From contig NC_043003.1 of NCBI RefSeq assembly GCF_006345805.1, positions 47,492,001 to 47,556,000 of the forward strand: 64,000 nt of DNA. The letters run 5' to 3'. The notes under the pieces are model-generated. The model was not told the DNA's origin, searched no databases, and saw nothing but the letters and a program-made list of their open reading frames with translations. This document shows, in pieces, positions 9,940 to 54,343 of the stretch. The DNA is from Octopus sinensis. Taxonomy: Eukaryota. The first letter of the stretch is position 1; each line of letters begins with the position of its first letter. Position numbers and translations under genes: made by a program.

Positions 9940-10173
9940 ACATGTTGAGATTGAAGTGTTTATTCTATAACATGAGTATAAATAGATTAATAGGGTTATA
10001 CTGAAATATTTGTCTGACATTTATTGATTTTAATAACAATGCGTAATGTCTTTGAAACTGTAATATCAGTGTAACCATGGTGCCATTTAGAAATTCAGTA
10101 TTAAAGTTGAACATAGAAAGAACGTTAGAAAAATGATGTAAATACAGAGTCTAGAGAACATTTTGTAAAATGT
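9940..10173 (-). other. GnRH: Putative last (3'UTR-only) exon of GnRH with poly(A) signals
   Basis: Donor TGA-AAG|GTAAAG at 10812/10811; strong acceptor ATTTCTCATTTCTACAG| at 10174/10173; AATAAA on minus strand at 10020-10025 and 9959-9964. The 3' end is approximate. Confidence 0.55.
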
Positions 10174-10814
10174 CTGTAGAAATGAGAAATTTATTTTATT
10201 TAATTTATTTTATTTAATTTTATTTTAAGGTAATAAATATTTTCTATTGAAAATTAGTATTCATTTCATAACTTAGTGTAAGCACCATGATATTTGATAA
10301 AAGTTAAATTATGGTTATTGTACATATACCATATTCCCTAATATTACCCATGGTGGCTAAAATATACTTCTTATTTTTATATTTGTGAAAAATATATGTT
10401 ACTATTTTTCTAACTTTTATCAACATGGACACAATGTACTACTTTGAAAACCTGTCTCATCAAAATTTGAATTCCTCCTATAACTGTTCTGTCATTTACT
10501 CTCTCTCCCTGCTCTTCTGTCTATATGATTCAGTCTCTCTTACTGTGTGGAATGTTCCTTTATTCATTGCCTGCTACCAAGCCTAGTATGTGCACTTCTT
10601 GTCTTAACTCTCTCTGTATCTTTCCCTCTCACTTAAAGTGTGACTGTAGAACTCAACCAACCAGTGTTTATATTAGCTATTATTCTATAGAGATTGTTAT
10701 ATCCAAAACAAAATGTCTTTTTTTTTTTTCTAGTTACAATGCATCTTTAAAAGAAAAAAAAGATCTTTCAATTATCAATTTTGCTATGCAGAAATAATAT
10801 CCAAACTTTACCTT

Positions 10815-10877
10815 TCATAGGTCTGCAATCTCATTGACCGGCCCGGTACATGTTGTGATAATACGGTTAATCTCTTC
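10815..10877 (-). CDS. GnRH: GnRH precursor, second coding exon (EEINRIITTCTGPVNEIADL-stop)
   Basis: Acceptor TTACTTCTTTCAG|GAA at 10878/10877, 20 codons plus TGA (10815-10817). Phase 0 fits the upstream exon and completes the known 89-aa precursor. Intron 10878-12232 (1355 bp). Confidence 0.96.
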   Translation of the reverse strand, partial: EEINRIITTCTGPVNEIADL

Positions 10878-12232
10878 CTGAAAGAAGTAAACAATATTAA
10901 ACAATATTGAATGTAAATATGCATGTTAAGCTGGAACAAACGGGTTTAATTTAAAAACTACTGAGTGAGAATCAAAACTGAGCAGCTAGTAGGAACTCAC
11001 CAGATATTCACCCAGTATTCACTGTTTATTCTCTTTTATGTATGTCATTTGTATCTGCAAGCTTACTTGAATTTAAATATGTATATGCAAACATGTAATG
11101 CATAAGTGCAAATATGTATATGCAAACACATAGCTTTAACCACCCAACATATGTGTGCGCTAAAAAGGGGCCCTCTTCTTCATGGTCATTCAAATTGCTA
11201 GAAATCTAAATTTTCATCAAATCACACTATATTGTTTTTTAAAAAAGGATGACACATTGTATAATGCAGTCTTAGATACACATGATACCAGAAGAAAATC
11301 TTTGATGGAACATTGGTCAGATAATAAAAAGTTGACTCTGAACATCAACAACAACAACAATTTATAAATATACATTTTTTTCATTCAATTCAATTCTAGT
11401 CATATAATAAATTTAATGAAACTAAATTTTATTATTTTACACCCAGTTCATCATGTTTCTATATACCTGGGTGGTATCAGTTAATTTTACAGCTGGCTAT
11501 GTACCTCTCAAATTCCTTTCACCAAAGTATGTGTTGCTGTTCCTAACCACTCCAGTTTATCTTTACTTTCTTTCCTTTTTATTTTTGACTACTTACCCTC
11601 CTGACACCCTTGAACCATATCAGGAGAGACGTAGCTGTTACAATCATAGTGAAGGCAACCTGTCTACAATCTTGGTTGCTCTAAGTTGCAAATGAGGGCC
11701 CTGAATCCAAGTTAGCATCTGTAGTGCTGTACTGCAATAAGACACAATGACTTTTTTTCCTTTGATGGGAGGTGTAGGCCTAATATGTTGCCTAACTTAT
11801 CACCATTCCCTGGCAGAGTTATGTTTAGCTCACATGCACAACAAAATGCTTCATAACATTAACAGTTTACACTCAAAGCCGTTTAGTCAATAGTGTAGCA
11901 CTTAAACTGTACAGCCATTGATTTTTAAACACTTGCTTTAGAATATAGATTGTTATGTATTATAGATTTTGTATAATAATCTGATAAAATACATATCTTT
12001 TAGGCTATACTGAATTTTCAACCAAAATTTGACATTGTATATAAATTAAGTTTTGTTGGTTCTAAAATAAAGCTGTTACAGAAGTAAGTTATCTAAAAAT
12101 TTGTAACTCCCTGCCTCCCAAACAAATCTTTCAGGGACTATCCACATTAGCAAGGTTTTAAAAGCTGTAAAGATATATTGAAATGGACAACAAATGACAA
12201 AAAGAAAATTATGAAGAATATGCCAAACTTAC

Positions 12233-12439
12233 ATCTAAAATTTTTTCTATCAAAGCCTTTGTTTGTTGTCTGAAGTGACACTGAATGTCTGAGAGTGCAC
12301 TGCGTTTACCTCCGGGGTGCCATCCATTGCTAAAGTGGTAGTTTTGTGCTTGAGTCTGCAGACACAAAGATAGCAGCAACATGGAGAATATGAAGAAAGC
12401 CATTTTTCTGGAGCTGGTTGTTGATGCAGTAGCTGACAT
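12233..12439 (-). CDS. GnRH: Octopus GnRH (corazonin/GnRH-type neuropeptide) precursor, first coding exon: signal peptide, mature peptide, GKR site and N-terminal part of associated peptide
   Basis: 69 codons: MSATASTTSSRKMAFFIFSMLLLSLCLQTQA-QNYHFSNGWHPG-GKR-SALSDIQCHFRQQTKALIEKILD. Ends at a phase-0 donor GAT|GTAAGT (intron starts 12232). Upstream acceptor TTATTTCAG| puts the exon start at 12474 (35 nt of 5'UTR). Matches the known oct-GnRH precursor from memory. Confidence 0.98.
12311..12346 (-). other. GnRH: Mature peptide coding segment pQNYHFSNGWHPG-NH2
   Basis: N-terminal Gln directly after signal peptide (pyroglutamate), followed by amide-donor Gly and dibasic KR (12302-12310). Confidence 0.95.
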
Positions 12440-12808
12440 AATGACGTTTGCTGGTAGAATTGGATAAGTTAGATCTGAAATAAACAGCAGAAAGCCTGAG
12501 AGGAAGTTTTTATGAAATGATGTAAGATAGCAATACATGTTTTCAAGAGAGAATCTCAGCACTTTGCTGCGGTGACAAATATTGGGAACCGATTCATCCA
12601 TTTTTACATTTTGCACTCAAATTCCCACAAGGTTGACTTTGCCTTTCATCCTTTGAAAGGTCAATAAAATAAATACCGATTGAGCACTGGTGTCATTGTA
12701 ATCAACTAGCCTTGTTCCTTGAACTTGCTGACTTTGTGCCAAAATTTGAAACCGTTATTACACAATAGATTTAATGTTTCACTTTGACTACTGATTACAA
12801 TAAATGTG

Positions 12809-13037
12809 TTTACCTGTCAGCATTCAGATTACTCTGTCAAATGTAATGTTTATTTATTCACATTGTTTTGAATTAACCATGCATTATCTCACAACTTCAA
12901 GAGTTCAGTGATATGATTATTTACTTTTAAAATGACATTGCAGAATTATATGTAAGAGGCCAGATACAGCCAATTTCAACATAAAACATGTAGAATATTT
13001 GGGCCAGATATTACTGGTTTAAATACTAAAGGGTTAA
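12809..13037. mobile_element. piggyBac-like (TTAA) MITE in GnRH intron 1
   Basis: Right end AATACTAAAGGGTTAA, degenerate left end TTTACCTGTCAGCATT; ~230 bp. Confidence 0.65.
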
Positions 13038-13396
13038 GCTGTTATGTAGTTGGAGATATATTTATCTCCAATAACAGCACCATATTTATCATCATTATCA
13101 TCTGCTTGTCTAAAATTTATAGTCTGTTAGCTGAATGTATTTTACTATAGTTATCATCATCACTGCCACATGCTGATGTTTAGTGTTTATTTAAACTGGA
13201 ATTATTATTGTGCAGATTTAGTTTTCTTCTGTGTACACGGTGTTGATATGTGAATGGATTATGCAGCTATTCATATATGTATATAACACAAACTACAGAT
13301 CTCTCTCCCTGATAATAAACTATAATTCTCTCTCTCTGATAATAAACTACAGATCCCTCTGTAGGAATTTGTTGCTATATATATATATATATATAT

Positions 13397-13431
13397 CAGA
13401 AATACTAAATTTCTAAATCTCTCGTAGAGAC

Positions 13432-13477
<46 letters not shown>

Positions 13478-13508
13478 AATACTAAATTTCTAAATCTCTC
13501 GTAGAGAC

Positions 13509-13511
<3 letters not shown>
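13397..13511. repeat. Exact 38-bp direct duplication separated by (TA)n
   Basis: CAGAAATACTAAATTTCTAAATCTCTCGTAGAGACATG at 13397-13434 and 13474-13511. Confidence 0.95.
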
Positions 13512-13544
<33 letters not shown>

Positions 13545-13856
13545 TATGTTGTATATATGTTTTTCTCTATGTGTGTTGGGTATACAAATTGCTATATCTG
13601 TGTGCTAGTGCATGCATATTGTTGTATAAATGTATTGAAATGTGTACTGTATTTTATATAAATTGTTATATATGTGGTTTAGATATGCACATTGCTGTAT
13701 GTGTGTGCTGGTGTGTGGCACATGTATGAAAGCAATCTCTTGGACAAACGAAATGATCAACAAAGCAAAACAGACACTGCTGTACACATTAACCGTTTGA
13801 CAGTTGAAAAGTTTTTTTTTGTTATGTTTTTTGTCATTATGTTCCTGTTATATGAA

Positions 13857-14390
13857 AGCCAGTGAGTTGGCAGAATCATTAGCATGCCAGATAATATGCT
13901 TAGTAGCATTTCGTCTGTCTTTACATTCTGAGTTCAAATTCCACTAAAGCTGACTTTGCCTTTCATCCTTTTGGGGTTCTTAAAATAAGTACCAGTTGTA
14001 CACTGGAGTCAATGTAAACAATTGCCCCCCCCCCCCCCCCCCGCCGCTACAGTTGCTGCCTTATGCCAAAATTTGAACCCATTATTTTCCTGTCACACAC
14101 ACACAACATTGATGTTCATTATTGGTAGATGAAACTAAAGCTTCACTGCATCAAGTCTGAAACATTCAGAATGAAACATTCAACAGGCAAAATGCTTAGC
14201 AGTATTTCACCCATTGCTACGTTCTGAGTTCAAATTCCACCAAGGTCAACATTGCCTTTCATCCTTTAGGGGCCAATAAATTAAGTACCAGTTGAGTACT
14301 GGGGTTGATGTGACTGACTTCCCCCCTCCTCACAAAATTCAGGCCATGTGCCTATAATAGAAAGGATTATTATTATTATTATTATTATAT
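13857..14390 (+). mobile_element. Two family-A SINE copies in GnRH intron 1
   Basis: Copies at ~13857-14085 and ~14185-14390. Confidence 0.8.
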
Positions 14391-14399
14391 CAACCCTTG

Positions 14400-15000
14400 C
14401 ATTCTATTGAGGGTTAGTGGTGAGCAAAACTGATGATGTTGAAAAGAGTCTAGGCATCAATGAAGAGAAACTTAACACTTTGTCCTGGAAGACCTACAGC
14501 CTGAGAAGTGTGGTTGACTTCCATGAATCCCTGGCTTAGCAGTGCTACTAGGAGAGCATTATCAGGTTGGGGAAAAAACTGTACAGAAATGGAAATACTG
14601 TCAGCTGGGCCTGTCTAAGATGTATGCTGAGTAATGAAACCACACTGTTTGCACATATTCAGTTCCAAACATTTCTGATTTCTGGAGTTATGTCAAACAG
14701 TTGCTGTCACATAAAAGACATGGTTCTTAGCTGAGTCTATTACGAGGATTACTTTGCCATCTTCCTTTGTCCAAGAAGGATAGGCAGTTTTCTTCTGCTA
14801 GTGGTTATAGTAAAAGAGATGTACTGTAAGAGCCAAGTTCTTAACTTCTTCAAGCTTCATTTGAAGAGGAAGGTAAGGGTTGAGAGGGAGGTGTCATCTT
14901 CCAGAAAATATGCTGGAAAGTAGAAATAGTTGTCTGGGGTTGTCAAAGTTATCTGGTATATGTGAGGATTTGTTCCTTTTTTGACCTCAGATGGTTGTCC
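14400..15000 (-). mobile_element. Possible CR1-like LINE remnant in GnRH intron 1
   Basis: Minus FLEDDTSLS (YADD-like) and a W...L..FQDKV tail; very decayed. Confidence 0.35.
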
Positions 15001-16084
15001 CCTATTGGGACATCTGTTTCATTTTCATATTTTCTACAAAAGTATTATATACTTTTGCTTTCTATGTTGGCTTGATTTCATACAAACATACATTTAGTAA
15101 TTTGTTTCTGTAATGTTGCCTTCATCTACTGCGCTTCTGGCAAATAAGAAATAACTTTTATCATCATTATGAAGGGCAAAAACTGTAGACAGGCTAAATA
15201 CCATTTAGCAGTCAATTACAGTCCTCCTTGTTCTTAGTTCAAACTTCATTGGATTTGATTTTGATTTTCATCATTGCAAGATTGATGAAATAAAGTACCA
15301 GTAAAGTACAAAGTCAGTTGAATTGACTGTACTTTTCCCCCAAAAATGTGGTCTTCTATCGAAATTAGAAATTAGTATTATTGAAGTTTGTCATTTGTTA
15401 CAAACAGTAGAGCACCAGATTAAATGCTTTGTAATATTTAGTTTCATCTTTTCATCTCTGAATTTTGAATTGAAATTTCCCAATGATTGAATTTATCTTT
15501 TAGGGTCAGTAAAATAAGCATAAGACATAAGCCAAGATTAATACAGCTGATTGACTGTTTACCCTCACCCTAAAAATCCTTGGTTTTTTGCTAGTATTAA
15601 AAATTAATGTTAGGATTAGAAAGTATAATGGAGTATATAAAATAGTATATAAACTAAAATCTTCCAGTATTTAGTTCAAATCCTGCCAGTGTAGGGCCTT
15701 ATTCTTGGGTTGATTTGTAAGTATCAGTAGTATGCTGTGGTGAATTCAGTTGACTACACAATTTCCCTATAAATACATGGCCTAATGATAATTATATATG
15801 TTATATTATAGACTAAACTGGATACTATTAAACACTTGAGTTGGATTTCAAAAGCGAAAAGTATTGAGCTTGATTCATTAATACATTTTGTACCATTCTT
15901 CCCTCTGAATAAGATATTGGTGTTCAGAATGTAGTTGTTGTGTGAACTTTAAACAAATAATTTGGTGTGAGAAGATATTTATATATAAATTAGTAAGAGA
16001 GAAAAAACGAGAATTAGAATACAGTAATTAAATCATATAATATCAGCTAAAGAAAAAGTAGTGTTATGTAATATCCTTTCTGCA

Positions 16085-16290
16085 ATACGCACAAGGCCTG
16101 AAATTTTGTGGAAGGAGGCTGGTTGATTACATCAGCTCCAGCATTCGAACTGGTACTTATTTTATCAACCCTGAAAGGATGAAAGGCAATGCTGACCTCG
16201 ACAGAATTTGAACTCAGAATCTAAAAGCAGAAGAAATGCTGTTAAGTATTCTGTCAAGTGGGGTAATGTTTCTGCCAGTTTGCCTCCTTA
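16085..16290 (-). mobile_element. Family-A SINE copy, opposite orientation, in GnRH intron 1
   Basis: CTGGTACTTATTTTATCAACCCTGAAAGGATGAAAGGC...ATTTGAACTCAGAATC. Confidence 0.8.
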
Positions 16291-16522
16291 TAGTGTGATG
16301 TAATATAATTTAAAAAAATTTTTAGTGGAAGCGTGGATTAGAAAACTCCAAAATACATATAGTATAGAAATAGCCCTCTTGTTTCTCTTTTTTTTAAGAT
16401 AGTTATTGAGAAGGAAAATCTATATGTGAAGTTAACAAATCAAGGTATAAGAGAGAGAGAGATAGAGAGACCATGTAAAAGAAATTTTGTTTTTTTAACA
16501 AAGGAAGATTTTGATATTTTAC

Positions 16523-16579
16523 CTTTAGTGTGGAACTTGAGTTTGTTCTATGTATCAGGTTCAGGACGCTGTTCAGAGT
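16523..16579 (-). other. GnRH: Putative non-coding exon 1 of the GnRH gene
   Basis: Initiator-like TCACTC (16576-16581, +1 A at 16579) 33 nt downstream of TATTTAAA; ends at donor CTAAAG|GTAAAA (intron starts 16522). The coding exon has an acceptor at 12475-12477, so an upstream exon is required. Not confirmed by transcript data. Confidence 0.6.
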
Positions 16580-16676
16580 GAAGGAATCTCCTGAAAGTGG
16601 TTCCTTTAAATAGAGAGATCTTGTCGCATCATCACCATCACTACAAGAACCACCTATTCTTCAGTGCTCCCGCCCA
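16576..16676 (-). promoter_or_regulatory. Putative GnRH core promoter: GC box, TATA-like box, Inr
   Basis: Minus strand TGGGCGGGAG (16667-16676), TATTTAAA (16605-16612), TCACTC (16576-16581) in canonical order and spacing. Confidence 0.55.
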
Positions 16677-17264
16677 AACTGTTGCATAAATCTAGAAACA
16701 AACACTGACAACAACAACATCAACCACAACAACAATAATACTGATGCAGTATAAGCAATAGGTGGTCATGATGACAATGATAATGATGATGATAGAGATG
16801 AGGATGATGTGCAAATGTATTATTTAGCAACAAAGGTGGGAAGGCCATGGAATTGCCCAAACAAATCATTTCTGACATTGTCAACCTGGTGGTGGTGGAG
16901 GTGTCAATGATGCTGCATTTTTGATGATGTAGTGTTGTTGTGATGGTGAAAGAGGTGAGTTAAGGAAAGTGAAAGTTAGTGGATTGGGTGAGTGTGGGGT
17001 CTGAAATTTTTATGTGTCTCTACTGCGTATGTATGTGTATTATGCCTGTATTCACGAATAATTGTTTTTATGTGTGTGTCTTGGTATATGCTTTTATACA
17101 CACACACACACACATTTGTATGTATGTCATGTTACTCTTACCATAATTGATATCCATTTGTTTTTTTCCATACATAATGCATAATAGAACTATGTAACAT
17201 GCCTAGGTACATATATATTTGCATGTATAAGCAAATACACATATACACACTTATATAAATAAAG

Positions 17265-17310
<46 letters not shown>

Positions 17311-17659
17311 TACACTTATATAAATAAATAAATACACATACATATGTGTGTGAGTGTATTTTATGTATGTATGTAAACATACACATAAACATACATACAA
17401 AAGTGATGGAATTATGTCCCTCCCCACCTTATAGAATTTTTCAGCTCCACCTCCTCATTGTTGGTGATGCAGCATGCTACTGGTTTGTGTCCATGTGATG
17501 AGGATGCAGTCAGAGTGCAGGCGTAGATGCCTGTGGAGAGGTGTGGCAGAACTGTAGCGAGGAAGGAAAAGGAAGATGAGGAGGGAACTTAGTGCTGTGG
17601 GTTGTCTTTATACTCTCTGGCCACTGGTCAGTCACTTGTTCTCGGTACATGCATACATA

Positions 17660-17788
17660 CACAAACACACACACACACACACACACATTCAGTTATACAC
17701 CCATTCATTTATAACACCCACTCATTTGATCACACCTTCACATACACATGAACAGACACACGCACACACACATCAATGCATACGTACA

Positions 17789-17831
<43 letters not shown>

Positions 17832-17954
17832 CAAGGTAAATATTTATGTACTTGTGAAAATGTAGAAAATTCAAATGCATATATATATATATATATTACA
17901 TGTGTGTACACGCCTGCGTGTGTGTGTACATGTATATATATATATGTGCATATA

Positions 17955-17998
<44 letters not shown>

Positions 17999-18175
17999 TA
18001 TATACACATACATACATGTCATTCAATTATCGTGTAAGTGGTTGTGTACATACACACACACACACACTGACTAACAAACACATTGTTATATAAAAGCACA
18101 CATTTAAAACAATGACACATACGCATATACAAATATGTCAATAGTATAATAAATGCATAATCTTTATAAATGCGT

Positions 18176-18220
<45 letters not shown>
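17660..18220. repeat. Compound (CA)n/(TA)n/(TG)n microsatellite block
   Basis: Direct reading. Confidence 0.95.
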
Positions 18221-18222
<2 letters not shown>

Positions 18223-19439
18223 GACATGCATGTATGTTGTAAATGGTTCTGCATCAATTTCAACGATGAATATTCCTTTTGTTTTGATCAACTAAACTAA
18301 CTAATCTTTGAATTAGAATGTAGGTGGCTGTGTACTCCACAGATGCATATACACTTAATTTAATTCTCAGCCAGGATTTGCATGGCAGTGTGTGACAAGA
18401 CTGGTCCTTTGAATTATAGATTCTGTCCATCCAATAGGCTTCTATGGTTTGCGTCTACACTTTTTCACTTACAAAGCTTGAGTCGACCCAAGGTGATTGC
18501 AAAAAGTACTTTGCCAAGATGCTGAGTAGTGGGATTGAACCTTGGATCTCATGAATGCAAAGTAGAATTCTTAACTACTTGGATAGTCTACATCCTGTTA
18601 TACACATTAAACAAACATATACCTGCATATTGTATACACTAAAAACAAAAAAAAAACACCCTTACAACTACGCATATGCAAAAATATAAATATACATATA
18701 TAGTTATCAATACATTCATATTGATAGATACATGATCATCACCATCACTGTCATCATTTTAAAGTTTGCTTTTTCCACATTTGCATGGGTTGGATGGAGT
18801 TTATTGGGGTGGATTTCCTATGGCTGGATGTCCTTCCTCTTGTTAGCCCTCACCTGCTTCTAAGTAAGGTAATATTTCCCCTTCCTCCATGGTTAGTCAT
18901 ATTTTTGCAGAATATTAGAAATGAATGACTCTGCTCATATGAGAGTGAAAACTGATTCATGACTACTACGCAATGCCAAGACAAGGGGACAGACAAGGGG
19001 CACACACACACACACATGCACACTCAGAGGTTTCTTTTGGTTTCCATCTATCTAATCCACTCACAAAGCTTTAGGTGGCACAGAGTTGTAATAGAAGACA
19101 CTTGCTTCCAGGGTGCCATGCAGTGGGATTGAACCATGGCACTGAAGCTATGTGGTTGGGAAGCAACCATATTTACCACGCAGCTATGTCTGCACCTATA
19201 TATATTCATGCCTTAATTGATTAGATTTGTAGATCAGGCCATTGAATGATAATACATGAAACGAATTCACCCACGTTGTCACAACAGATGTAGCATCCAT
19301 GAAAACTACACAAAACATATATATTGCATGCTACAAAAATAACTCATAAGCTAGAACAGTTCATGTGTCTCACCAAACTACAAACTCGTAGTTGTTTTAC
19401 AAAAACCACATGAATGAAAATTATTCTTTTCAACATGAA

Positions 19440-19660
19440 ACCACAAACTAGCAAACCACAGAATGTACCTCAGGAAACAAATGTCCTGTACAAAATCGTG
19501 GAAGTTGTAAATTTCGTAACTAAGACTTCATAGCATTGGATACAAATCTTCACCTCTCATCCATTTAACTTGTATTTACAACAAGGAACTTTCACAACTC
19601 ATGATACAGTCATGAAAATACTAGTTGACAATCTACAATTTTGCATAGAATTCTTCAAAA
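19440..19660 (+). mobile_element. Possible Penelope GIY-YIG region remnant
   Basis: CTSGNKCPVQNRGSC...FHNS*YSHENTS*QSTILHRI resembles the Cys-rich pre-GIY-YIG segment; decayed. Confidence 0.3.
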
Positions 19661-19929
19661 AAGAAAAAAGAAAAAAAGATGAATAACTGTGTGAAATTTC
19701 CTCAGATTGAATAGTTGTATGATGTTTATGTGTATGCATGTGTGTGTGTATATATCATCACCATCATCATTTAACATCCATGTTCCATACTGGCTTAGAT
19801 TGGATTACTTAACAGGTTCCATTGGGTCAAAGGACTACATCATGCTCCAGTGTCTGCTTTAGTATGTTTTTTTTTACTGGATGCCCTTTCTAACATCAAC
19901 CAATTTATAGTGTGTTCTGGGTGCTTATA

Positions 19930-19968
<39 letters not shown>

Positions 19969-43300: not shown

Positions 43301-44651
43301 GTGCAAGTATCGCTTTGAGTTCAGCTGTTTTCAGAGTACTTGTTTCTCTGTTTATCAGTCCATCTGTTTGTCTGTTGGATTCTTTCTACTCCTAGTTCTC
43401 TCTTACTTCTTCCCATAATGCCCCACTCTATCTTTCCTCACCCAGATTCTCTTTTTAGGAATTAACAAGAAATTTTATTTGTTTATTACATAATTGAATT
43501 CAGGGCAAGTTTTAAAAATTCTCCCTTTTTCTCTCTCCTGCTAACCCAGTCACTCTGTCTACCTTGGTTACCAAGTCCCCCTGGTAAATAAGTCACTCTG
43601 TTCATTCCAGCTGATCAAGTCTCTTTTTCCACTCCAGCTGACTAAATGTCTCTGTCTACTCAATCGGGCAAAGTCCCTCTGTATTCTCCAGCTGTCTAGT
43701 TCCTCTGTTTCCAGAGGATCTATCCCTTTAACTGCTTTTTGATTATCAACTTTCTAAAGATTGATAGTCAGTTCAGTTATTAATTCACAGTTTTTTTGTT
43801 TTTGTTTTTTGTCTATATGCACATACATATTCAGATATTTACAGAAAAAGTTTTAGGATCTGGTGATTTAACAGTGGATTTTTTTTTTTTCCTTTCCCTA
43901 ACACTCTTCCACTGCGAGACATAAATGGTATTGGTGATATCTATTTTTCAGCAAGATATGTTAAAATACCTTTATGCTAGTGTGTTTTTGATTGAATGTA
44001 AGCTTAGTTAACATATAAACCTTGAATGTAGGGCTGTCATCTCTGACCAGTGGCCATACCATAATCCATTTGCTTTCCTTTACAATCATCAACTATATAA
44101 TTTAATCATTAGTCAGAAGATCTTTGTGATCTATCTCACCCTTCATGATACAATCCACTATCAACATTTACATCTTTAGATTACATTAGACTAACCCAGC
44201 CTCAAAGGATTTCTTTGGCCAACCCTTTTCTGTATTCCTGTATTCTCTGAACTTTTTCTGCTCTGTTTTTACTCTGGCTGGTACACTTTTGAACACCCTC
44301 CAGTTTGGTATGCATGTGTGTGTGTGTTCCCAGCAGACCACCCTGTTCTGTTGGACACACCCTGCCTTGTCTTCTGTGTTATGTCCTTAGTCATCATCGA
44401 CAGTGATGGACAAATTGTGTGTGTGGCATGACAGATTGTTACAGTAAGGTCTAGTAAATGGGGCCAGTCATGGTACCATGAAAAAGGAATGGTCCAGTGA
44501 ATCATTTTGATGATAAGCTATACCATTCTGTAACTCCTGGTAAATTAGCATGATGCTCCTCTGTAATATGTAGATTCTCAAATCCCCAGCAGGTGCAATT
44601 GTGGTGATTAACTGAACCATTTAATTTAAATGTAACCTCATCCCTCTAAAC

Positions 44652-44975
44652 CAAGGGTTCTCAAACCATTTTTTATCTATGGACCCCTTTGATTACCATT
44701 TTATTCTGGTGGACCCCTGTAGCTATTCGATGTTTAAAAACTAGTTTTATAGAAACTTCTTTCAAGATTTCTATTTTGTTTTTCACACACTAACTTCTAT
44801 AGATTGAACTATGTAAAATGTTAGAGAAACATGCAAAAACATACATCTAAAGTAAACTTTTTCAGGGGCCCTCAAAATACTATTGTGGTTTCCCAGTTTA
44901 CTATTTTGTTGTATGCACCCCAAAAATCTTATATGAACCCTCATGGGCCATGTGAAGCCCAGTTGAGAACCACTG
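44652..44975. mobile_element. hAT (Charlie/Buster-like) MITE, 324 bp
   Basis: TIRs CAAGGGTTCTCAA / TTGAGAACCACTG and a perfect 8-bp target-site duplication CTCTAAAC (44644-44651, 44976-44983). Confidence 0.9.
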
Positions 44976-47900
44976 CTCTAAACAGTCTTTGTTGGCAAGT
45001 GTGCATCTTCTTCACATCTTGCCAAGTACTGCTCACAAAATTCTACTCTTTGGTCTGGAATCATCTTTATACAGAATATGGGCAATTCTTGGAATGTAAC
45101 TGCTTGGCTTGTAGGTTTAAAAGTCTGGTTTCTTTTTAGACAAACCTTGTGTTATATGATACTTCAACATCATCTCTCTCTTGCTCTCTCTCTCTCTCTC
45201 TTTGACCAGATAACCAAGTACCTCCTCTATAACAAGACACCTGTTTCTCTCTGTCACACTCTAATCTTCTATGATCTAACTCAAGACCACCTACTCAAAT
45301 ACCACAGGTTCTTTGTCTTGCAAGTTACTTGGTGACCCCGTAAAACACATACAATCCATATTGTAAAGAGGTTGGCACTTGGAAAGGCATCCAACAGTAA
45401 AAACCATACCAAAACTGACCTCACCTTTGCATGTGCCACGTAAAAAGCACTCAGTCCACTCTGCAGGATGGCTGGTGTTAGGAAGGGCATCCAGCCGTAA
45501 AAAGCCATGCCTAAACAGACACAGAAATCTGATGCAGGCTTCAGTGTGGCCAGCTCCTGTCAAGCTGTCCAAATATGGAGAGCAGATATTAAACAATGAT
45601 GATGATGATATATATATATATATATACATAGATAACTGTGTGATCGAAAACTTTTCAGGAATTGATTCTTTTTCCATTACATCACCAACTTTTTTTGTTT
45701 CTGTGGCTAATAATTTTACTTTGCATCATGCTTTAAGTATTTCCATATTGAAACTTGATTATCATCATATTTTTATCACTTGTATGTATGTTTAACTTTT
45801 TATCACCGTCATCAACTGTGTAATTTTATTTTTTCTCCTCAATTACACTTGAGCAGAATACAGACAATTGCACAAATTCAATGGAAAGCTAGTCAAACTA
45901 ATCACCAAAAGATTCACTGCATATTTAACTTCAAGACAATTTCTTTTATCGGAAGATATATGATGATTATTGAAAGTCCTCTTTTTGCCTCAACAGAACT
46001 CAGAGCAATGGTATTAATGATATATTTAGTCCTTTGTGCTGTTGTTGGACTTTCATAATTATGAAAGCTTTGGGTAACATTTTTTATATAATCACGGAAA
46101 TGATTAACACAGATTTTATAGTGAAATTGTTTCTAGAATTATTACAGGTTTTCTTCAGCTATTTCCCAGGGGATAACAACTTCATTAAGTTCATCAAGAA
46201 TCTGAGTTAACATCGTTTACCAATACAAACATTTCACTGCTAGTTTCGTATGGATTATTGCTTGAGTGTATGCTATGAAATTCCATCAACCTTAGTTTTA
46301 TCTGTTTTATTATTACATCTTATAATCCTTGGTGTGGAAAAATTATGTTTTTAATATTTCTTAAACTCAATGTTCCAAAATACTTCAGTTGCTAAATCCT
46401 TGTTTTCAAAGCCCCCTCCCCCACCCCCATTTGCTTTGAAATTTTTTTAATGATTTGATCACAGGCATGGCTATGATTAAGAAGCTTGCTTTCCAACCAC
46501 ATGATTTCAGGTTCAGTCTCATTGTGTGGCAACTTGAGCTTGTGTCTTCTACTATAGCCCCAGGCCAACCAACTAAAGTCTTGTTTGTGGATTTGGTAGA
46601 AACTGAAAGAAGCCCATTGTATATGTGTGTTTGTGTGTGTCTGTGCATGTTTGAGTCTACCCTTGTTTTGACATCATGTGATGGTTATAAATGGGTATCA
46701 CTGTCATACAAGTGATGTTTATTTCTATTCCCCTTTGAAAAACATGTTTGACCAAGGAGAAATGTTACCTCTTTTGGAAACAAGTGAAGGTTGGTGGCAG
46801 GAAAGACATCAGACTGAAGAAAATCTGTCTCAACTGGTTATGGCTGACCCATGCAAATATTATCCTCTTCATTAATTTTTTCACTTTTTGATAAACTGAA
46901 TATTTTGATTGTTAAGTGTTTAAATAAAAGGAAAGTTCTTGTAATATATCCTCCAGAAAAGATATGCTGGGAAAATGGTTAGCCATTCTTAGAAATTTTC
47001 CCTTTGTAGAAAGAAATTCAAACAATCCTAGGTAAGAGGGCACAGGCATGGCTGTGGTAAGAAGCTTGCTTCCCAACCACATGGATCTGGGTTCAGTCCC
47101 ATTGCAAAGCACCTTGGGCAAGTGTCTTCTTCTATAGCTTCAGGCTGACCAAAGCCTTGTGAATGGATTTGGTAAACAGAAACTGAAAGAAGCCCGTCAT
47201 ATGTGTGTGTGTGTGTCTTTGTGCTTGTCCTCCCATCACTGCTTGACAACCAGTGTTGGTTTGTTTACATCCCTGTAACTTAGTGGTTCAGTAAAAGAAA
47301 CTGATAGAGGAGTCGATTTGTTCTCTCTATCGACTCCTTCTGAGATTAAAATTGCCTGAAGTCAATTTTGTTTTTCATCTTTTCAGGGTTGATAAAATAA
47401 GTACCATTTGAGAACAGGAATCAATGTAATTGATTTATCTCTCTCCTTAAAATTGCTGGCCTTGTGCCAAAAGTAGAAAGAATTATATATAGTTACTAAT
47501 AACTTTTATTTATTTATTTATTTATTTTATTTGCTAGCTTATTTTATTTTGATCTTTTCATTTTATCTTATTTTGGATAACCTGGAGCTAACAGCCCAAA
47601 TGTAAAATTTCCAAAAATATTATTAGAATGTTTCATTAGAAATTTTATTTTAAACACATTATTATAATACAAAGCAAATTTTAATTTAAGCACATAATTA
47701 TAACACAAATAGAGATTTCATTGAAACAAGTTATGATAATACAAACAAAAAGTAAGAATTAAGACTGATATTTGCCTGTAACCATTTTGAATCAGGCTGT
47801 CAAATGACGCACAGACTCATTGGCGGTAGTAAATTTTTAAAAACTAAGCTTGATGCTTGCAATATGATTGTGTAGAAATATATATTGTTGCAACTGCAAG

Positions 47901-49297
47901 TGGTTATAAGTCACATAAGTTGCAAGTTGAAGAGTGTCTGTCAGTGTGTGCTCGTGGTATGAGATAGATTTACATGCTGATAGTAATACATAAAATAGTA
48001 AAGTCTTTGGGTAGAATGCTTTGTGGTATTTGCTCCAACTCTCTTGCACAAACACACAAATTGAGGACAGTAGATGTGCAAAATTGTAAAAGGGTCAATA
48101 AAATGCCTTGTATCTGTTCTGGCCCTTTGCAATCTACAGCAATGCCTGCAATGACACTGTGACACTGCTTTATTGGCTCATGTCTGCAGCCTTTCCCTTA
48201 CATAGACATTGGTGGCACAAGAAGGAGAGATTTGTATTAATAGATAACTGTCAGTCTTCCTCTAAAAATCTTGTCCACATCTATGCATGCATGTACAAAT
48301 GCATGGTCAACTTTGACAAACAGAGCCCCTACATACATGAGTAAGTGTGTGTTTGTGTGTGTAAACATACATACATATAATCCCTTCTACCATAAGCTCA
48401 AGGCCTGAAATTTTGGAGGAAGAGGCTAATCAATTGCATCGACCCAGTACTCAACTATACTTGATTTATTATTAAGGTTACCTGTGCAACTTGTAAATAT
48501 ACAGTTCTTTTTCCTACTTGCACTCCATCATCACATGACTAAAAAGAGGCAACGATCACGCTGGGATGGTGCTCTTATAATTTAATGCAAAAAGAAAACC
48601 TAGAAAAAAATGAATTTAATTATTTTATCATGACTTTCATTCCTTTTTCTGTGATCAGTGATTTAATGTGGAAGTTTAAATTGTCATATAATTTGAATAA
48701 TATTGTCAAAGAAGTAGAATTTTTTAATTTATAAAGAGACAATATTTAAGCAATAACAACAAATACAACAAATTTTATAAGTATTGAAAGCTCCTTTTTT
48801 TGTATAACTACTCCCCTGTAACATTATTTTTTGGCATAATATCAAGTAGGTCTTTACAATTGCAAAGTTATTATTAAGAAGACAATTTTTACTGCAGTTC
48901 TCTCTCCATGAGCTACTAGCATTTTTTAAACCATTATACAAAAAGCATATAATATGCAAATCAAAATATTATTGAGTATCAAATGTGAACAGTGCCAACC
49001 GCAAACATACATAAATAATGACTAATCACATACCTCTGAAAAATTAACAAAATTAATAAAGGTTAAGAAGTCTGTTTTTAAAAAAGGTCTTCCATATCAA
49101 ATTGATATTTTTAATTTGAAATTATTGGAAAAATGTTCACGTTTGCACCCCAACTGGAAATTATGCATTTGATATGGGGAAATGTTTGATTTTTAGAACT
49201 CTACAGAGTTCTATGATTTAATTTTAGTAACTGCTTTGTGACTGAATCCTACCATAATACATACATCCACACATATATACATGCGCACATTATATAC

Positions 49298-49340
<43 letters not shown>

Positions 49341-49470
49341 AGGTGATACCTTGCAGTACAAGTTCAATTCGTTCCATGACAGAGCTTGTTTTACGATTTA
49401 CTCGTTTTACAAATCAATTTTCCCCATTAAAATTAACTAAAATATAGTTAATCTATTCTAGCCACCCCAA
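49341..49470 (+). mobile_element. Tigger/pogo-like transposon terminal fragment
   Basis: After (TA)n: GGTGATACCTTGCAGTACAAGTTCAATTCGTTCC...CAATTTTCCCCATT...GTTAATCTATTCTAG resembles recalled Tigger-type termini. Confidence 0.55.
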
Positions 49471-49659
49471 AACCACCCAAAAATAACTTCTTATGGGTTT
49501 TAAAACAGAAAAGGTGCTGCACGGAATTTTGTCAGTGAATAGGTGATGGTCTCAAAGCGACGAATAAATTTTGATAAATTAAATTTAAATGTTGAAGTGA
49601 ATCTAACGGATTTTGTGTGTTTCTTAAATGGCTTTTAAACACCTTCCACACTGCAATTG

Positions 49660-49724
<65 letters not shown>

Positions 49725-50672
49725 GGTGGTTGTCTACTCCTTATGCATAGTTTGAGCATCTCCTGTACCTACACCTCAGCACCATCATGGCGTCTGATGT
49801 GGCTTTTTAAACCAGACAATGTTCTGAAAAGACACCCACATAGATTGCACATCTGATGTGGACCACCAAGAGCTGCAGATAAGTTCTGATCTTTGTGGAT
49901 CTTAAGATGTCTTTTGAGGTCTCTGTTGGATTTGCAAACCTTCTAGCATACACTGCATTCAAAGGTGTGCACAGACATATAGGCAGAATAGTTGGTGGAG
50001 GTTCGTTTTCCATGGGTTCACAGATGAGATTTGAGCCCAGCAAGAGACAGGCATTGTCTGTCACAAACTGTGCACACAAAAGGTCATTGTCATTTACCTT
50101 CTCGATCACAACATTCTTCCTTAGATCTCTTTTGAGTTATCCTGGCCTCTTCAAATGCTTTCACTCCACTCCACACTTTTGTTCTCCATCCAACTTGATT
50201 GGAAGCAAGGGTTTCTATGTTTTCTGAATCCATTCCAAGGGACTTCATAGTAGTCCTTATGCCAGCCTTAAACCTTTTTTTAAGTTTATGCTGTTTCTCC
50301 TCTGCAAGCTCACAAAAGGATGGAAAAATACAGGTGCGAATTAAAAGGGCAGCAAAAGCATTTGGTGGCTTTGAGTCACATGTTTGGTGCCAGTGATGTA
50401 TAAATGAGAATACAAAGCTGGCTCTTTACAAATCATTTGTCTTACCATCCCTGTTGTAATCTTGTGAATCATGGACTTGTTATGAAAGGCATTTTAAATT
50501 GTTAGAACAATTCCACCAAAAATGCCTTCATTGCATTTTAAACATTAAATGGAGTTCTTTTACTCCATTGCATCTGCTGACATCACCTCAATTAAAGCTA
50601 TGATTTTGAGGAGCCAAATGATATGGTGTGGCCATATTGTTCGAATGGTTGATGAACGCATGCCAAAACAGC

Positions 50673-50680
<8 letters not shown>
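49725..50680. mobile_element. RTE-clade LINE 3' fragment with inverted 5' segment, inserted in (TA)n
   Basis: Plus 50315-50680 encodes DGKIQVRIKRAAKAFG...LYKSFVLPSLL*SCESWT...WCGHIVRMVDERMPKQLFY. Minus 50314-49725 continues (C)ELAEEKQHKLKKRFK...WRTKVWSGVKAFEEAR...CNLCGCLFRTLSGLKSHIRRH. Both are typical RTE ORF2 C-terminal motifs. (TA)n at 49661-49724 and 50678-50707. Confidence 0.85.
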
Positions 50681-50712
<32 letters not shown>

Positions 50713-50849
50713 GAGCAAAACGCCCTCCTCCTACCCGTCCAGTGGACGGTGCTGAATCATATCTGCTGAATAAAAAGCAATTAGTGTTTTCTTTTCATTA
50801 AAAATAATTAAGCATGCCTTCATTTCAATAAAATTTTTGGTTTTGTTAA

Positions 50850-51262
50850 ATGAAGTTAAGGCAAAAAAAAACTTCTTGAGAAACCAAATAGTCTTTCCTT
50901 CATGCGAAGTTTGAAGAAAATATCTCTTTTGCATCTTACTTTTTTGGTCTCTTAAATATACTGCATTTTGTGGCATTATTTCAAGCCAGCCAGTTTTTTT
51001 TTTGCATAAACTGCATGTGCATTTTTCTTGTGTATGCATAGTATCGATCGCAACAGCTGATGTACTTGTGCATACAAATGCACATTCCCATGGCTTTATC
51101 AATCGCATTCTCACCTGGAATCGTCTTTTGTAATTTTTTCAAGACTTATACACACCCTGATACCATTGGTATCTACATGTCAAATTTGAGCGCAATCAGA
51201 TGGAGGATGCCCGAGATCCTTGAAGACACACACACAGACAGAACGGATTTTATATAATAGAT
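50850..51262 (+). mobile_element. Possible Helentron-associated (DINE/HINE-like) non-autonomous element
   Basis: Ends CAAATTTGAGCGCAATC...ACACACACACAGACAGAACGGATTTTATATAATAGAT, a 3' layout typical of that class. Left boundary uncertain. Confidence 0.35.
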
Positions 51263-54245
51263 TTCCGAATTTGTGTGAATGTGTATAAAATAATATATCA
51301 GTTGAATAAAGTTAAAACATGGTCTGGTTTTCACATTTTTTTTTAATGGTATTTTAACATCAAAAAAATATTTTGTAATGTTCATAAAGTTCAATTAGCA
51401 CTTTCATACGTTCATAGTAATCATCAGATTTCAAAATGTATTTAACTGACAGTCGAGTTCTTGACAACTGTAGCACCTCTTAGAACACTCCAACAAGCTG
51501 AGTTTTTGGAATATGGTTTTGGCCAATCTCCTTGCAGCTTAAACATCATCGTTTTCTAAGCGTACTGATATTCTGTAATTTGTTTATATTCAAATGTTAA
51601 GGATATTTTTTAATCCAGATCATTAACTGGTTGTTATATTATTGTTGTTATTTCCGTTCAGAACAGGTTTGAACATTTTAATAAACTGTTTTATTTTTTA
51701 TCTTTCTTCCAACCTCACTTGTGTTCTGTAGTTTGTGGAAAGGAAAAAATCATATATATAATATTATATATAGCATGCATTATACTCTCAAAGTGGTTGG
51801 CAATATGAAGGGCATCCAGCCATAAAAACCATGCCATATCAGACTGGAGTCTGGTGTAGCCTTACATCTTGCCAGCCCTGGTCAAACTGCTCAACCCATG
51901 CCAGCATGGACAACAGATATTAAATGATCATAATGATGATGATCCATGTATATGTATGTATATTTGTATGCATATATGTATGTATATATATTATACACAC
52001 ATACACTCATCTAGTGTGTTTGCTCATTTGTTGTGACTAATGGCTGTACAAATGGTGTTATTTACTTGCAGTCAACTGCAAAAGCATGTTTGGTCTTCTT
52101 AACATGTTATGCGATGTTTGTAAAGAAAAGACTATTTCATGTGGTGTCATTTATTCTCAGCTCTCCATTTAAAAATGTTTGGATTCATTGTTCAACAAAT
52201 TTATTATTAGTTCTCCTGGAAACAAGTGGGTGACAAGAATTGCATCTGGCCATAGAAAACTGCTGTAACATACTCATCTGACCCATTCAAGCATGATAAA
52301 CCAAATGTTAAATCATTGCTGCAGCTGCATTTGTTCATTTAAGATTCAATTTTTTTTTTTTACAGAATTTACTTAATTGTCCTTAATCTCAAAAAAAATG
52401 TTTCCATCTTCTTTAGTATAGAAACATTAGGGGGTTTTATCTCCAAAAAGTAGATACAAATCAATGTTTGTAGTCATATTTTTTTATATTGATTAGCTTC
52501 TGTTCATTTATTTTCATTTGAACCCTTCATGTTTCCAAACTCTATCCTCTGGATATGGAGTAAGTTATATGTTATATCACTGGGGCAATTTTTTTGTGTT
52601 TTTTTTTTCATCCTTGCTTTTTATCCATCCCTAATACACTATCATTGGTACTGTGTTTTTTGTTTTGAATTTTTTTTAATATTCCTATTTCTATTTCTAA
52701 ATCTTAAAAAGTTTCTAAAATTAGAATTTCGTTCAAGGAGATATTTTCCTCAACCAAATTTTGTAACATCTGTAAGAAAGCAAATGTTTCGTTATATTTT
52801 TGCTTCTGTTGTTATTGATAATGATGTCTGATCTCACTACTAGTCTGCACAAGTAGCTTCCATATTTTAATGTCTCTATCATTTTATTATTTTTGCTATG
52901 AAGTTGTGACAAAGACTCTTGAAGTTGATGTACAGTATAATAATTTGTGTGTGTATAGACAATACTAGTCAATCTGAGATGATGAGGCCATACAAATGTT
53001 TCTTTGTAGGTTTCATACAGTACAAAGTCATTGTAGTTGTGGCTGTGTGGTAAGAAATTTACTTCCCTACTACAACTACATGGTTTGGGGTTCAGTCTCA
53101 TTGCAGGGCACTTAGGGGTAGTATCTTCTACTACAGCCTTGGACCAATCAAAGCCTTGTGATTATGTTTGGTAGACATAAGAGTAGATGTTAAATGATGA
53201 TGATATATATATGTTATTTTTTATTAATATTTAGTACAAGCAACAAGTGACTCAGTTGCTGAGAGGTTCATGCATTAGCTACTTATTAAATCTGTATATG
53301 TATATATGTATGAATGAATAAATGAATATCTCCTTGCTTTGACTTCATGTAATAGTTGTAAACATGTGTCACCATCATGTAAGCAGTGCCTGTCATTTTC
53401 AGCCTTCTGTAAAGTCATGTCTAGCCATGGGGGAATATTTCCTTATTTGGAAACAGCTGAGGGTTGCCAACAGGAAAAGCAGCCACCTGTAAAAAAAAAA
53501 AAAAAACCTGCTTGACTCATGCAAACATGGAAAAATGAACATTAAAACAATAATGATGCAATCATTGCAGGTCATCTTGCTTACGGTTTTTGTTAGGTGT
53601 GCAAAGCAAGTGACTTAACATCTGGTGAGCTGTAATCGTTTATTAAATTCTTCCATAATATAAGTTTTTACAAAAGAAAGACAAAAAAAAGAAAAAAAGT
53701 GGAAAAAAAAAGAAAAAAGTAAGAGAGAAAAAAAAACATCAATTCAGTACCGAGTTCTTCATTAGTTGCGCACCCATCTTGTATAACTGAAGCAAAATCT
53801 TACTGGTCTATGTTTGCTTCTCATGTTCTAATAGAGTACTGTTCATCAAAAGTCTTTCTTCTTACCATGCTTTTCTAGGATCAATCCCTAAGTATGCCAC
53901 CTTGGGCATGTGTCTTCTACTGTTGCAATAGATTGATCAAGATGTTGTGTATGAAATGTATGCATGTGTTTTGCTACACAAAGCAATAGTTTGTAAATTT
54001 GAATTGAGCAGCAGGAAAGGCATTTCCAGATTACCAGCCTTTTGTTATTATTGTTGTTGTTGTTATTGAAGAAGCTACTTCAGACAGACAGGCCCAAGAT
54101 ATTGATATATGTTTTAGCAAATCCTGGTAAAAGTGCCTTGGCCCTTTTCAGTTCAAATTTAAATTTCACTGAAGCCTTCTGCATTTACTTGAACTATTGT
54201 TTCCTGTATCGAACTAATATTTAAAAACTGTGTTCTGTCTTTCAG

Positions 54246-54343
54246 ACTTGTGATAGTAATTTGAAACAAAAGACTGAAGTGGTTGCCAAACTAGAAGAGA
54301 AAACTGAACAACTAGTAAATACACTGAAAGAAATGGAGAAAAA
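54246..54343 (+). CDS. RUFY2: Internal coding exon of a RUN and FYVE domain-containing protein (RUFY1/2-like), second coiled coil
   Basis: Acceptor TGTCTTTCAG|, donor AA|GTGAGT, 98 nt open, phase 0 to 2: TCDSNLKQKTEVVAKLEEKTEQLVNTLKEMEK. Aligns by eye with recalled human RUFY2 [33 protein letters not shown] (shared LEEKT, same spacing). Assignment is from memory, not a database search. Confidence 0.72.

What the first reader, a model, noticed from the sequence alone, without database searches (positions are those of the whole stretch)
9940..54343. GnRH/corazonin-type neuropeptide gene apparently nested antisense in a >50-kb RUFY intron
Seen: the complete GnRH gene is on minus (about 9.9-16.6 kb), and an internal plus-strand exon at 54246-54343 has an acceptor, a donor and a phase-0 start. 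Known: in RUFY1/2 this segment is preceded by the conserved MKLLEKD.HEKQDT...LRQQL..K.IN..M.QK.Q stretch. Inference: I could not find that preceding exon anywhere in 1-54245, so it probably lies left of the window. The intron would then span the whole GnRH locus. A key reproductive/cardioregulatory neuropeptide gene hosted antisense in an endosomal trafficking gene raises questions of transcriptional interference, sense/antisense dsRNA in an ADAR-rich nervous system, and conserved synteny.
Basis: partly seen in the sequence, partly recalled or inferred. Interest (0 to 1): 0.75.

Follow-up and report, generated by a model that had tools for sequence, protein, structure and literature searches.

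The report
Octopus GnRH gene beside lone RUFY exon
The known octopus GnRH neuropeptide gene lies about 38 kb upstream, on the opposite strand, of one genuine internal exon of the endosomal gene RUFY, so it very probably sits inside a giant RUFY intron; this is an ordinary nested-gene layout and the window cannot prove it.

Summary
Both observations hold. On the minus strand, two coding exons (12439-12233 and 10877-10815) splice into an 89-aa protein. It is 100% identical to the Octopus vulgaris oct-GnRH precursor Q8T8D2.

On the plus strand, 54246-54343 is a clean 98-nt exon with AG/GT borders and one open frame. Real RUFY sequences from the database hit it (tblastn E down to 2e-7). Its length, borders and phases are the same in three other animal genomes. 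In one of them (L001) the later RUFY exons, including the start of the FYVE domain, follow on the same strand.

The nearly invariant preceding RUFY exon (MKLLEKDIHEKQDT...) is absent from the whole window on both strands (profile of 119 real sequences, best E 1.6). RUN and FYVE exons are absent too. If the gene is collinear, its 5' exons lie left of the window and the intron is over 54 kb, about 22 times the O. vulgaris median. That intron would contain the GnRH gene in antisense.

This rests on inference, because sequence left of the window could not be reached. Opposite-strand nested genes are common. The suggested interference, dsRNA and editing effects are untested. Interest is low to moderate.

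The parts
16523..16590 (-). Putative oct-GnRH exon 1 (5'UTR). A TATTTAAA box lies just upstream at 16612-16605. The 5' limit is approximate.
   Evidence: Sequence reading only: the TATA-like box, and a donor AAG|gtaaaa after 16523. Inferred, because no cDNA was available.
12233..12474 (-). oct-GnRH exon 2. It carries the start codon (12439), the signal peptide, QNYHFSNGWHPG, the GKR processing site and the start of the associated peptide.
   Evidence: The spliced product is 100% identical to Q8T8D2.
10812..10877 (-). oct-GnRH exon 3. It encodes EEINRIITTCTGPVNEIADL and the stop codon (TGA at 10817-10815). A possible donor follows after 10812.
9940..10173 (-). Putative oct-GnRH exon 4 (3'UTR), with AATAAA at 10025-10020 and at 9964-9959. 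Alternatively the 3'UTR runs on unspliced from exon 3.
   Evidence: Acceptor tttctacag before 10173 and the poly(A) signals. Inferred.
54246..54343 (+). Internal coiled-coil exon of the octopus RUFY (RUN and FYVE domain-containing) gene. It is 98 nt long, starts in phase 0 and ends in phase 2.
   Evidence: splice sites and frame. (homology to real RUFY sequences). (the same 98-nt exon with AG/GT borders in three other genomes). (followed by later RUFY exons in L001).
1..54245 (+). Probable 3' part of a RUFY intron longer than 54 kb. It is rich in repeats, depleted of CpG, shows no other recognisable coding exon, and contains the GnRH gene in antisense.
   Evidence: No RUFY exon on either strand. 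No Rfam family or tRNA. The longest ORFs have no Pfam match passing the curated cutoff. Dispersed repeats. CpG o/e 0.12-0.33 in every 4-kb bin. Intron status is inferred.
54344..64000 (+). Start of the next RUFY intron. It is at least 9.6 kb long, and no later RUFY exon lies in the window.
   Evidence: No match to downstream RUFY exons from L001, L002 or L005. No FYVE motif.

Best explanation
The window is Octopus vulgaris (or a near-identical relative) genomic DNA and holds parts of two independent, already known kinds of gene.

(1) The complete oct-GnRH (GnRH/corazonin-type) neuropeptide gene is small, about 6.7 kb, with probably four exons and its own TATA-box promoter. It is transcribed leftwards on the minus strand.

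(2) One internal 98-nt exon of the single-copy-type RUFY gene is transcribed rightwards on the plus strand.

The RUFY exons that must precede this one encode the RUN domain and the invariant MKLLEKDIHEKQDT coiled-coil segment. They are not in the 54 kb to its left. They therefore most probably lie beyond the left edge, which puts the GnRH gene in opposite orientation inside a RUFY intron of more than 54 kb.

Shown: both gene identities, the exon borders and phases, and the absence of other RUFY exons in the window.

Inferred: collinearity of RUFY across the left edge, and hence the nesting.

Most likely way of working: the two units are transcribed independently. RUFY polymerases would read through the GnRH locus from its 3' end towards its promoter. 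Any interplay, such as head-on interference or intron/mRNA duplexes, would be confined to cells that express both genes. Nothing here indicates that such interplay is selected for.
For: GnRH identity and structure.

RUFY identity of the exon: the profile search returned proteins named RUN and FYVE domain-containing protein 1/2 and RUFY3-like. In these, the homologous 33 residues follow ...INxxMYxKxQ. tblastn of those real sequences gives E 2e-7 to 2e-4 on 54243-54344 only. The Logan transcript L003 carries a RUN domain, then MKLLEKD, then ECESSLKHKTE... in one molecule.

Conserved 98-nt exon with AG/GT borders in L001, L006 and L009, with similarity ending exactly at the splice sites. Fish ORFs that read through the intron show it at the same position (P0012, P0015, P0059, P0122).

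In L001 the exon is followed on the same strand by three further RUFY exons, including the start of the FYVE domain (E 4e-12). No MKLLEKD exon lies in the 10 kb upstream, so the upstream intron is the long one there too.

The upstream exon is absent from the window on both strands: HMM of 119 real fragments, best E 1.6. A real invertebrate RUN-domain sequence finds nothing.

The window has no N gaps. CpG o/e is uniformly low (0.21) from end to end, with GpC about 1 and an excess of TpG/CpA. In O. bimaculoides methylation is reported on bodies of broadly expressed genes and not on intergenic DNA (PMC9476566). This is weak support, because I had no genome-wide baseline.
Against: No RUFY exon is seen to the left of GnRH, so the defining feature of nesting is unobserved.

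An intron of more than 54 kb is about 22 times the O. vulgaris median of 2,467 bp, and exceeds the median gene length of 20,288 bp (PMC10700109).

No protein in the 5.8-billion-sequence collection contains this exact exon, although that collection does hold O. bimaculoides UniRef proteins. So no annotated octopus model that includes the exon was seen. This word-indexed search also missed P0002, which shares words with the query, so the negative result is soft.

Expression and splicing of the exon were not testable. The octopus genome baseline for CpG o/e is unknown to me.
Confidence: 0.7

Rival explanations
1. The exon is a stranded piece of RUFY: a relic of a partial duplication, rearrangement or misassembly. 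The RUFY 5' exons would not be upstream on this chromosome segment, GnRH would be an intergenic neighbour, and the exon would be unexpressed or used by another transcript.
For: Only one RUFY exon occurs in 64 kb. The implied intron is far in the tail of the octopus length distribution. No database protein carries the exact exon.
Against: The exon has an intact frame, a strong polypyrimidine tract with CAG acceptor, a GTGAGT donor and the ancestral 98-nt length and phases. A decaying fragment would be expected to lose these. In L001 the orthologous exon is also at least 10 kb from its upstream partner while clearly part of an ordered RUFY gene. The window has no gaps.
Confidence: 0.2
2. RUFY transcription starts from a promoter or first exon inside 16.7-54.2 kb. 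GnRH and RUFY would then be divergent (head-to-head) neighbours and not a nested pair.
For: Short non-coding first exons cannot be detected by homology, so one in this interval cannot be excluded.
Against: A transcript starting there would lack the RUN domain and the invariant MKLLEKD segment. These are present in every RUFY sequence recovered, vertebrate and invertebrate, and absent from the window. No window of 500 bp combines high GC with high CpG in that interval. At most this would add a truncated isoform to a full-length gene that still spans GnRH.
Confidence: 0.06
3. The 54246-54343 frame is a chance coiled-coil-like ORF or belongs to a different coiled-coil gene, not RUFY.
For: It is short (33 aa) and rich in K/E, so composition inflates scores. 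It gives only noise against PDB sequences.
Against: It aligns position for position with the RUFY segment in many real sequences (45-50% identity to invertebrate RUFY, 64-70% to three other genomes). The similarity stops exactly at the splice sites, the exon length is conserved, and later RUFY and FYVE exons follow in L001.
Confidence: 0.02

Closest known systems
Octopus vulgaris oct-GnRH precursor (GnRH-related peptide, UniProt Q8T8D2 / BAB86782.1)
   Same: The spliced window product is 100% identical over all 89 residues. The mature peptide pQNYHFSNGWHPG-amide is the one listed for octopus, cuttlefish and squid in PMC5592718.
   Different: Nothing differs at the protein level. The window adds the genomic exon-intron layout: two coding exons, plus inferred 5' and 3' UTR exons.
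RUFY1/RUFY2 (RUN and FYVE domain-containing proteins), coiled-coil region
   Same: The exon aligns with the 33 residues that follow ...KAINxxMxxKxQ in real RUFY proteins. Intron positions and phases on both sides are shared with fish genes and with three invertebrate-type genomes.
   Different: Only this one exon is present. RUN, FYVE and all neighbouring coiled-coil exons lie outside the window. The flanking introns (over 54 kb and over 9.6 kb) are much longer than the downstream ones in L001 (about 0.5-4 kb).
Opposite-strand host/nested gene pairs in animals (for example mammalian H13/Mcts2, and C. elegans opposite nested pairs)
   Same: A small gene with its own promoter would lie wholly inside an intron of a larger gene on the other strand. 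[quoted passage not shown]
   Different: Here the left-hand host exon is not observed. No expression, methylation or interference data exist for this pair.

Membership tests
GnRH/corazonin-type neuropeptide precursor (oct-GnRH) | N-terminal signal peptide, then Q-initiated GnRH-type peptide QNYHFSNGWHPG, then a Gly amidation donor and a dibasic KR cleavage site | tested here: met
   MSATAS...LQTQA|QNYHFSNGWHPG|GKR read from 12439-12233 on the minus strand. The peptide matches the published oct-GnRH (PMC5592718).
GnRH/corazonin-type neuropeptide precursor (oct-GnRH) | Full-length identity to a characterised precursor | tested here: met
   100% identity and 100% coverage to Q8T8D2, E 1.5e-52. 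72% identity to the cuttlefish/squid precursor cluster.
RUFY gene (RUN and FYVE domain-containing) | Sequence homology of the exon to the RUFY coiled-coil segment, at the right position in the protein | tested here: met
   tblastn with real RUFY fragments gives E 2e-7 to 2e-4. The aligned residues directly follow the MKLLEKD...INxxMY.K.Q segment.
RUFY gene (RUN and FYVE domain-containing) | Conserved exon borders, length and phases | tested here: met
   The exon is 98 nt with AG/GT borders in the window, L001, L006 and L009. Fish read-through ORFs show the same junctions.
RUFY gene (RUN and FYVE domain-containing) | RUN-domain exons upstream on the same strand at the same locus | not testable with these tools
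   They are not in the window. Sequence left of the window could not be fetched. The RUN domain and this segment do occur together in one transcript of another species (L003).
RUFY gene (RUN and FYVE domain-containing) | FYVE-domain exons downstream on the same strand | tested here: inconclusive
   No FYVE motif or later exon lies in 54344-64000, so they must be more than 9.6 kb away. In the orthologous locus L001 the FYVE start follows 6.6 kb downstream on the same strand.
Opposite-strand nested gene pair | A host exon on the 3' side of the nested gene (in host orientation), on the opposite strand | tested here: met
   The RUFY exon is at 54246-54343 on the plus strand. GnRH is at about 9.94-16.6 kb on the minus strand.
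Opposite-strand nested gene pair | A host exon on the 5' side of the nested gene, so that the nested gene lies within one intron | not testable with these tools
   No RUFY exon lies in 1-9939 or anywhere else in the window. The exon must lie outside the window if the gene is collinear.
Opposite-strand nested gene pair | Host transcripts actually splice across the nested gene | not testable with these tools
   No transcript data for this species were reachable.

The most novel reading that the evidence does not exclude
The GnRH-in-RUFY arrangement may be an old, conserved microsynteny, perhaps shared by other molluscs or reflecting an ancestral GnRH-RUFY linkage group. In that case host transcription or intron-mRNA duplexes would tune GnRH output in neurons that express both genes.

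From memory only, and untested here: human RUFY1 (5q35) and RUFY2 (10q21) lie on two of the four chromosomes of the EBF/GnRH paralogy group (8p21, 20p13, 10q, 5q).

The only hint here is indirect. In L001 the intron upstream of the orthologous exon is also the long one (over 10 kb, against about 0.5-4 kb downstream). No GnRH-like motif lies within the 10 kb that I could read.
Probability: 0.08. Interest if true: 0.55.

Novelty: new member of a known kind. Interest (0 to 1): 0.28.

Why it matters
If confirmed, the result gives the genomic context of a much-studied cephalopod neuropeptide gene. That is practical information for three purposes: designing knock-outs that do not damage the host gene, interpreting antisense reads over GnRH in RNA-seq and single-cell data, and annotating octopus RUFY, whose isolated exon is easily missed by gene models. 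It does not by itself reveal a new mechanism, because opposite-strand nested genes are frequent in animal genomes and usually have no demonstrated functional coupling.

Tried and rejected
1. Direct homology search with the exon. With the 40-aa open frame no candidate was found. This negative result is soft, because P0002 shares three 5-residue words with the query and was still not retrieved.

2. The exon against PDB sequences gave only designed coiled coils and noise.

It was later validated indirectly, because the profile containing such segments retrieved proteins named RUFY. All conclusions rest on the retrieved real sequences.

4. Attempts to read beyond the window or see annotated neighbours all failed. 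Q8T8D2 and the O. bimaculoides protein are not on record. Ten window ORFs from both ends are not in the collection.

5. Other genes in the presumed intron were not found. There is no Rfam family and no tRNA. The ten most protein-like long ORFs gave no Pfam match passing the curated cutoff. tblastx against L001 shares only the exon and a LINE reverse-transcriptase fragment.

6. Later RUFY exons taken from L001, L002 and L005 were not found in 54.3-64 kb.

7. Literature: no paper in the library holds RUFY together with GnRH and synteny, or RUFY together with octopus. I found no octopus genome-wide CpG o/e baseline, so the CpG-depletion argument stays weak.

8. The species of L001, L006 and L009 could not be determined. 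Their GC content (45-49%) and the lack of nucleotide similarity outside the exon show that they are not close octopus relatives.


Full report
**What the window is.** The window is AT-rich (GC about 0.29-0.40), has no gaps and is full of repeats. It encodes the Octopus vulgaris oct-GnRH precursor exactly, so it is octopus nuclear DNA, from O. vulgaris or a near-identical relative. The O. bimaculoides protein differs at one residue.

**The GnRH gene.**
- A six-frame motif scan finds QNYHFSNGWHPGGKR once, on the minus strand at 12346-12311.
- The exon that carries it starts after a tttcag acceptor at 12474. Its ATG is at 12439 and it ends at 12233 before gtaagt.
- A scan for acceptor plus open frame plus stop finds one convincing partner, 10877-10815: ctttcag|GAAGAG..., encoding EEINRIITTCTGPVNEIADL and a stop.
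- The two pieces give 89 residues that are 100% identical over full length to UniProt Q8T8D2 / BAB86782.1, 'GnRH-related peptide precursor [Octopus vulgaris]' (E 1.5e-52).
- The mature peptide is the published oct-GnRH (PMC5592718).
- A TATTTAAA box at 16612-16605, followed by a donor after 16523, fits a non-coding first exon. A donor 3 nt after the stop codon, an acceptor before 10173 and AATAAA at 9964-9959 fit a 3'UTR exon ending near 9.94 kb.
- These UTR exons are inferred from sequence only.

**The plus-strand exon.**
- 54246-54343 is 98 nt. It is preceded by a strong pyrimidine tract and cag, and followed by gtgagt. Only one frame is open.
The named ones are 'RUN and FYVE domain-containing protein 1', '...protein 2-like' and 'RUFY3-like'.
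- In these real sequences the residues that align with the exon follow directly after ...MKLLEKDIHEKQDTxxxLRxQLExxKxINxxMYxKxQ.
- Used as tblastn queries, they hit 54243-54344 with E 2.2e-7 (P0019), 4.3e-7 (P0011) and 1.0e-6 (P0017). Nothing else in the window is hit.
- Two Logan transcripts tie the segment to the RUFY architecture. L003 encodes a RUN domain, then MKLLEKD..., then ECESSLKHKTELLSKLE... in one molecule. L002 continues into the downstream coiled coil.

**Conservation.**
- An exhaustive HMMER scan of 1.84 billion representative proteins with the 32 residues gave only three hits, at 68-74% identity. All are short ORF calls on genomic contigs.
- Their contigs (L001, L006, L009) carry an exon of exactly 98 nt with AG/GT borders. 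Protein similarity begins and ends exactly at those borders.
- Between L001 and the window nothing else is conserved except a LINE fragment.
- Fish ORFs that read through the intron (P0012, P0015, P0059, P0122) show the intron at the same place.
- L001 is decisive for gene context. The exon at 10121-10218 is followed on the same strand by:
  - ...ETDLQIEREWRSTLQKTLEQEKEKV... at about 14.3 kb,
  - a further exon at 14.94-15.04 kb,
  - ARSKLKMEDLREAHQQTREFQWASDESVTQCKQCTKEFSISRRK at 16.83-16.97 kb (E 4e-12). This last exon is the start of the FYVE domain.
- The exon is therefore a genuine, ancient internal RUFY exon. A chance coiled-coil frame is excluded.

**Where is the rest of RUFY?**
- I built an HMM from the upstream-exon segment of 119 retrieved RUFY fragments and searched all six frames of the window with filters off. 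The best hit was E 1.6 at 6.5 bits, which is noise. Motif searches for LE[KR]D, EKQD and similar patterns gave nothing relevant.
- tblastn with the real invertebrate RUN-domain and coiled-coil sequences found only the one exon.
- No FYVE signature exists in any frame. Later exons taken from L001, L002 and L005 are not in 54.3-64 kb.
The window holds exactly one RUFY exon, with at least 54.2 kb of non-RUFY sequence before it and at least 9.6 kb after it.
- In L001 the upstream partner is likewise absent from the 10 kb before the exon, whereas the downstream introns are about 0.5-4 kb. The long intron sits on the same side there.

**What fills the interval.** There is no Rfam family and no tRNA. 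The most protein-like long ORFs give no Pfam match that passes the curated cutoff. About 19% of the window is dispersed SINE-like repeats with up to 17 copies. A degenerate LINE reverse-transcriptase fragment lies at 50.4-50.7 kb, and there are many microsatellites. This composition is what an octopus intron or intergenic stretch looks like.

**CpG depletion.** CpG is depleted evenly from one end of the window to the other. CpG o/e is 0.21 overall and 0.12-0.33 per 4-kb bin. GpC o/e is about 1 and TpG+CpA is in excess. In O. bimaculoides, methylated CpGs are reported to cluster on bodies of broadly expressed genes and to be comparatively depleted from intergenic DNA and transposons (PMC9476566). 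A uniform methylation footprint therefore fits the idea that the whole window lies inside one broadly expressed transcription unit. I could not obtain a genome-wide baseline, so I count this as weak support only.

**Interpretation.**
- RUFY is on the plus strand, and its 5' two-thirds are not in the window. A collinear gene must therefore have those exons to the left. That places GnRH (9.94-16.6 kb, minus strand) in antisense inside an intron of more than 54 kb.
- Such an intron is about 22 times the O. vulgaris median (2,467 bp; median gene length 20,288 bp; PMC10700109). This is unusual but within what a 2.7-Gb-class genome shows.
- I put about 0.7 on the nested layout and about 0.2 on a stranded or misassembled exon. 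The remainder goes to an internal promoter or a non-RUFY reading.
- I could not read sequence left of the window or any octopus annotation.

**How it would work.**
- GnRH has its own TATA promoter and is known as a neuron-restricted peptide gene. RUFY is an endosomal adaptor gene.
- If the pair is nested, RUFY polymerases cross the GnRH unit from its 3' end to its promoter, head-on to GnRH transcription. The RUFY pre-mRNA intron would be complementary to GnRH RNA.
- Whether this matters depends on co-expression, which was not tested.

[quoted passage not shown] No paper in the library links RUFY with GnRH or with octopus. The finding is therefore a new example of a known kind of arrangement. 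It is useful for annotation and experimental design and is not surprising in itself.

Noticed in passing
window 1-64000: CpG is strongly and evenly depleted. CpG o/e is 0.21 overall and 0.12-0.33 in every 4-kb bin, with GpC o/e about 1 and TpG+CpA o/e 1.26-1.59. This is a footprint of germline methylation across the whole window, including the GnRH locus and the repeats.
   Followed up: partly
L001 13519-14440: In the RUFY gene of the unidentified L001 species, the 5' part of the 'ALETDLQIEREWRSTLQKTLEQEKEKV' exon occurs in about 5-6 tandem copies separated by (ATG)n/(GAT)n tracts. This is either a real tandem expansion next to a coding exon or an assembly artefact.
   Followed up: no
L001 1-10120: In this other species, too, the exon upstream of the orthologous 98-nt exon is more than 10 kb away, while the downstream introns are about 0.5-4 kb. 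The upstream stretch holds a LINE with endonuclease, RT and RNase H ORFs at 682-4539.
   Followed up: partly
window 50412-50680 (+): A degenerate LINE reverse-transcriptase C-terminal fragment. It has frame shifts between 50460-50600 and 50549-50752, and is similar to the sequence just downstream of the RT ORF in L001. It has no Pfam hit.
   Followed up: partly
window, e.g. 3388-4109, 13847-14388, 16065-16292, 34649-34900, 58016-58459: A dispersed SINE-like repeat family of about 200-400 bp has up to 17 copies in the window, in both orientations. Copies lie inside the GnRH introns and next to its promoter. Together with other dispersed repeats it covers about 19% of the window.
   Followed up: no
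window 7400-7730, 17550-18100, 27900-28400, 59480-59600: Long microsatellite tracts of (TG/CA)n, (TA)n-like and trinucleotide type generate many of the longest spurious ORFs.
   Followed up: no
window 36000-41000: The most GC-rich stretch (GC about 0.40) has a strong negative GC skew (-0.18 to -0.29, C-rich on the plus strand) and almost no CpG (o/e 0.0-0.2). It holds no recognisable gene or domain.
   Followed up: no
window 10812-10817 (-): The GnRH stop codon lies only 3 nt before a good donor site (TGAAAG|gtaaag). The 3'UTR may therefore be split by an intron, which would give a four-exon layout like vertebrate GnRH genes. This is unverified without a cDNA.
   Followed up: partly
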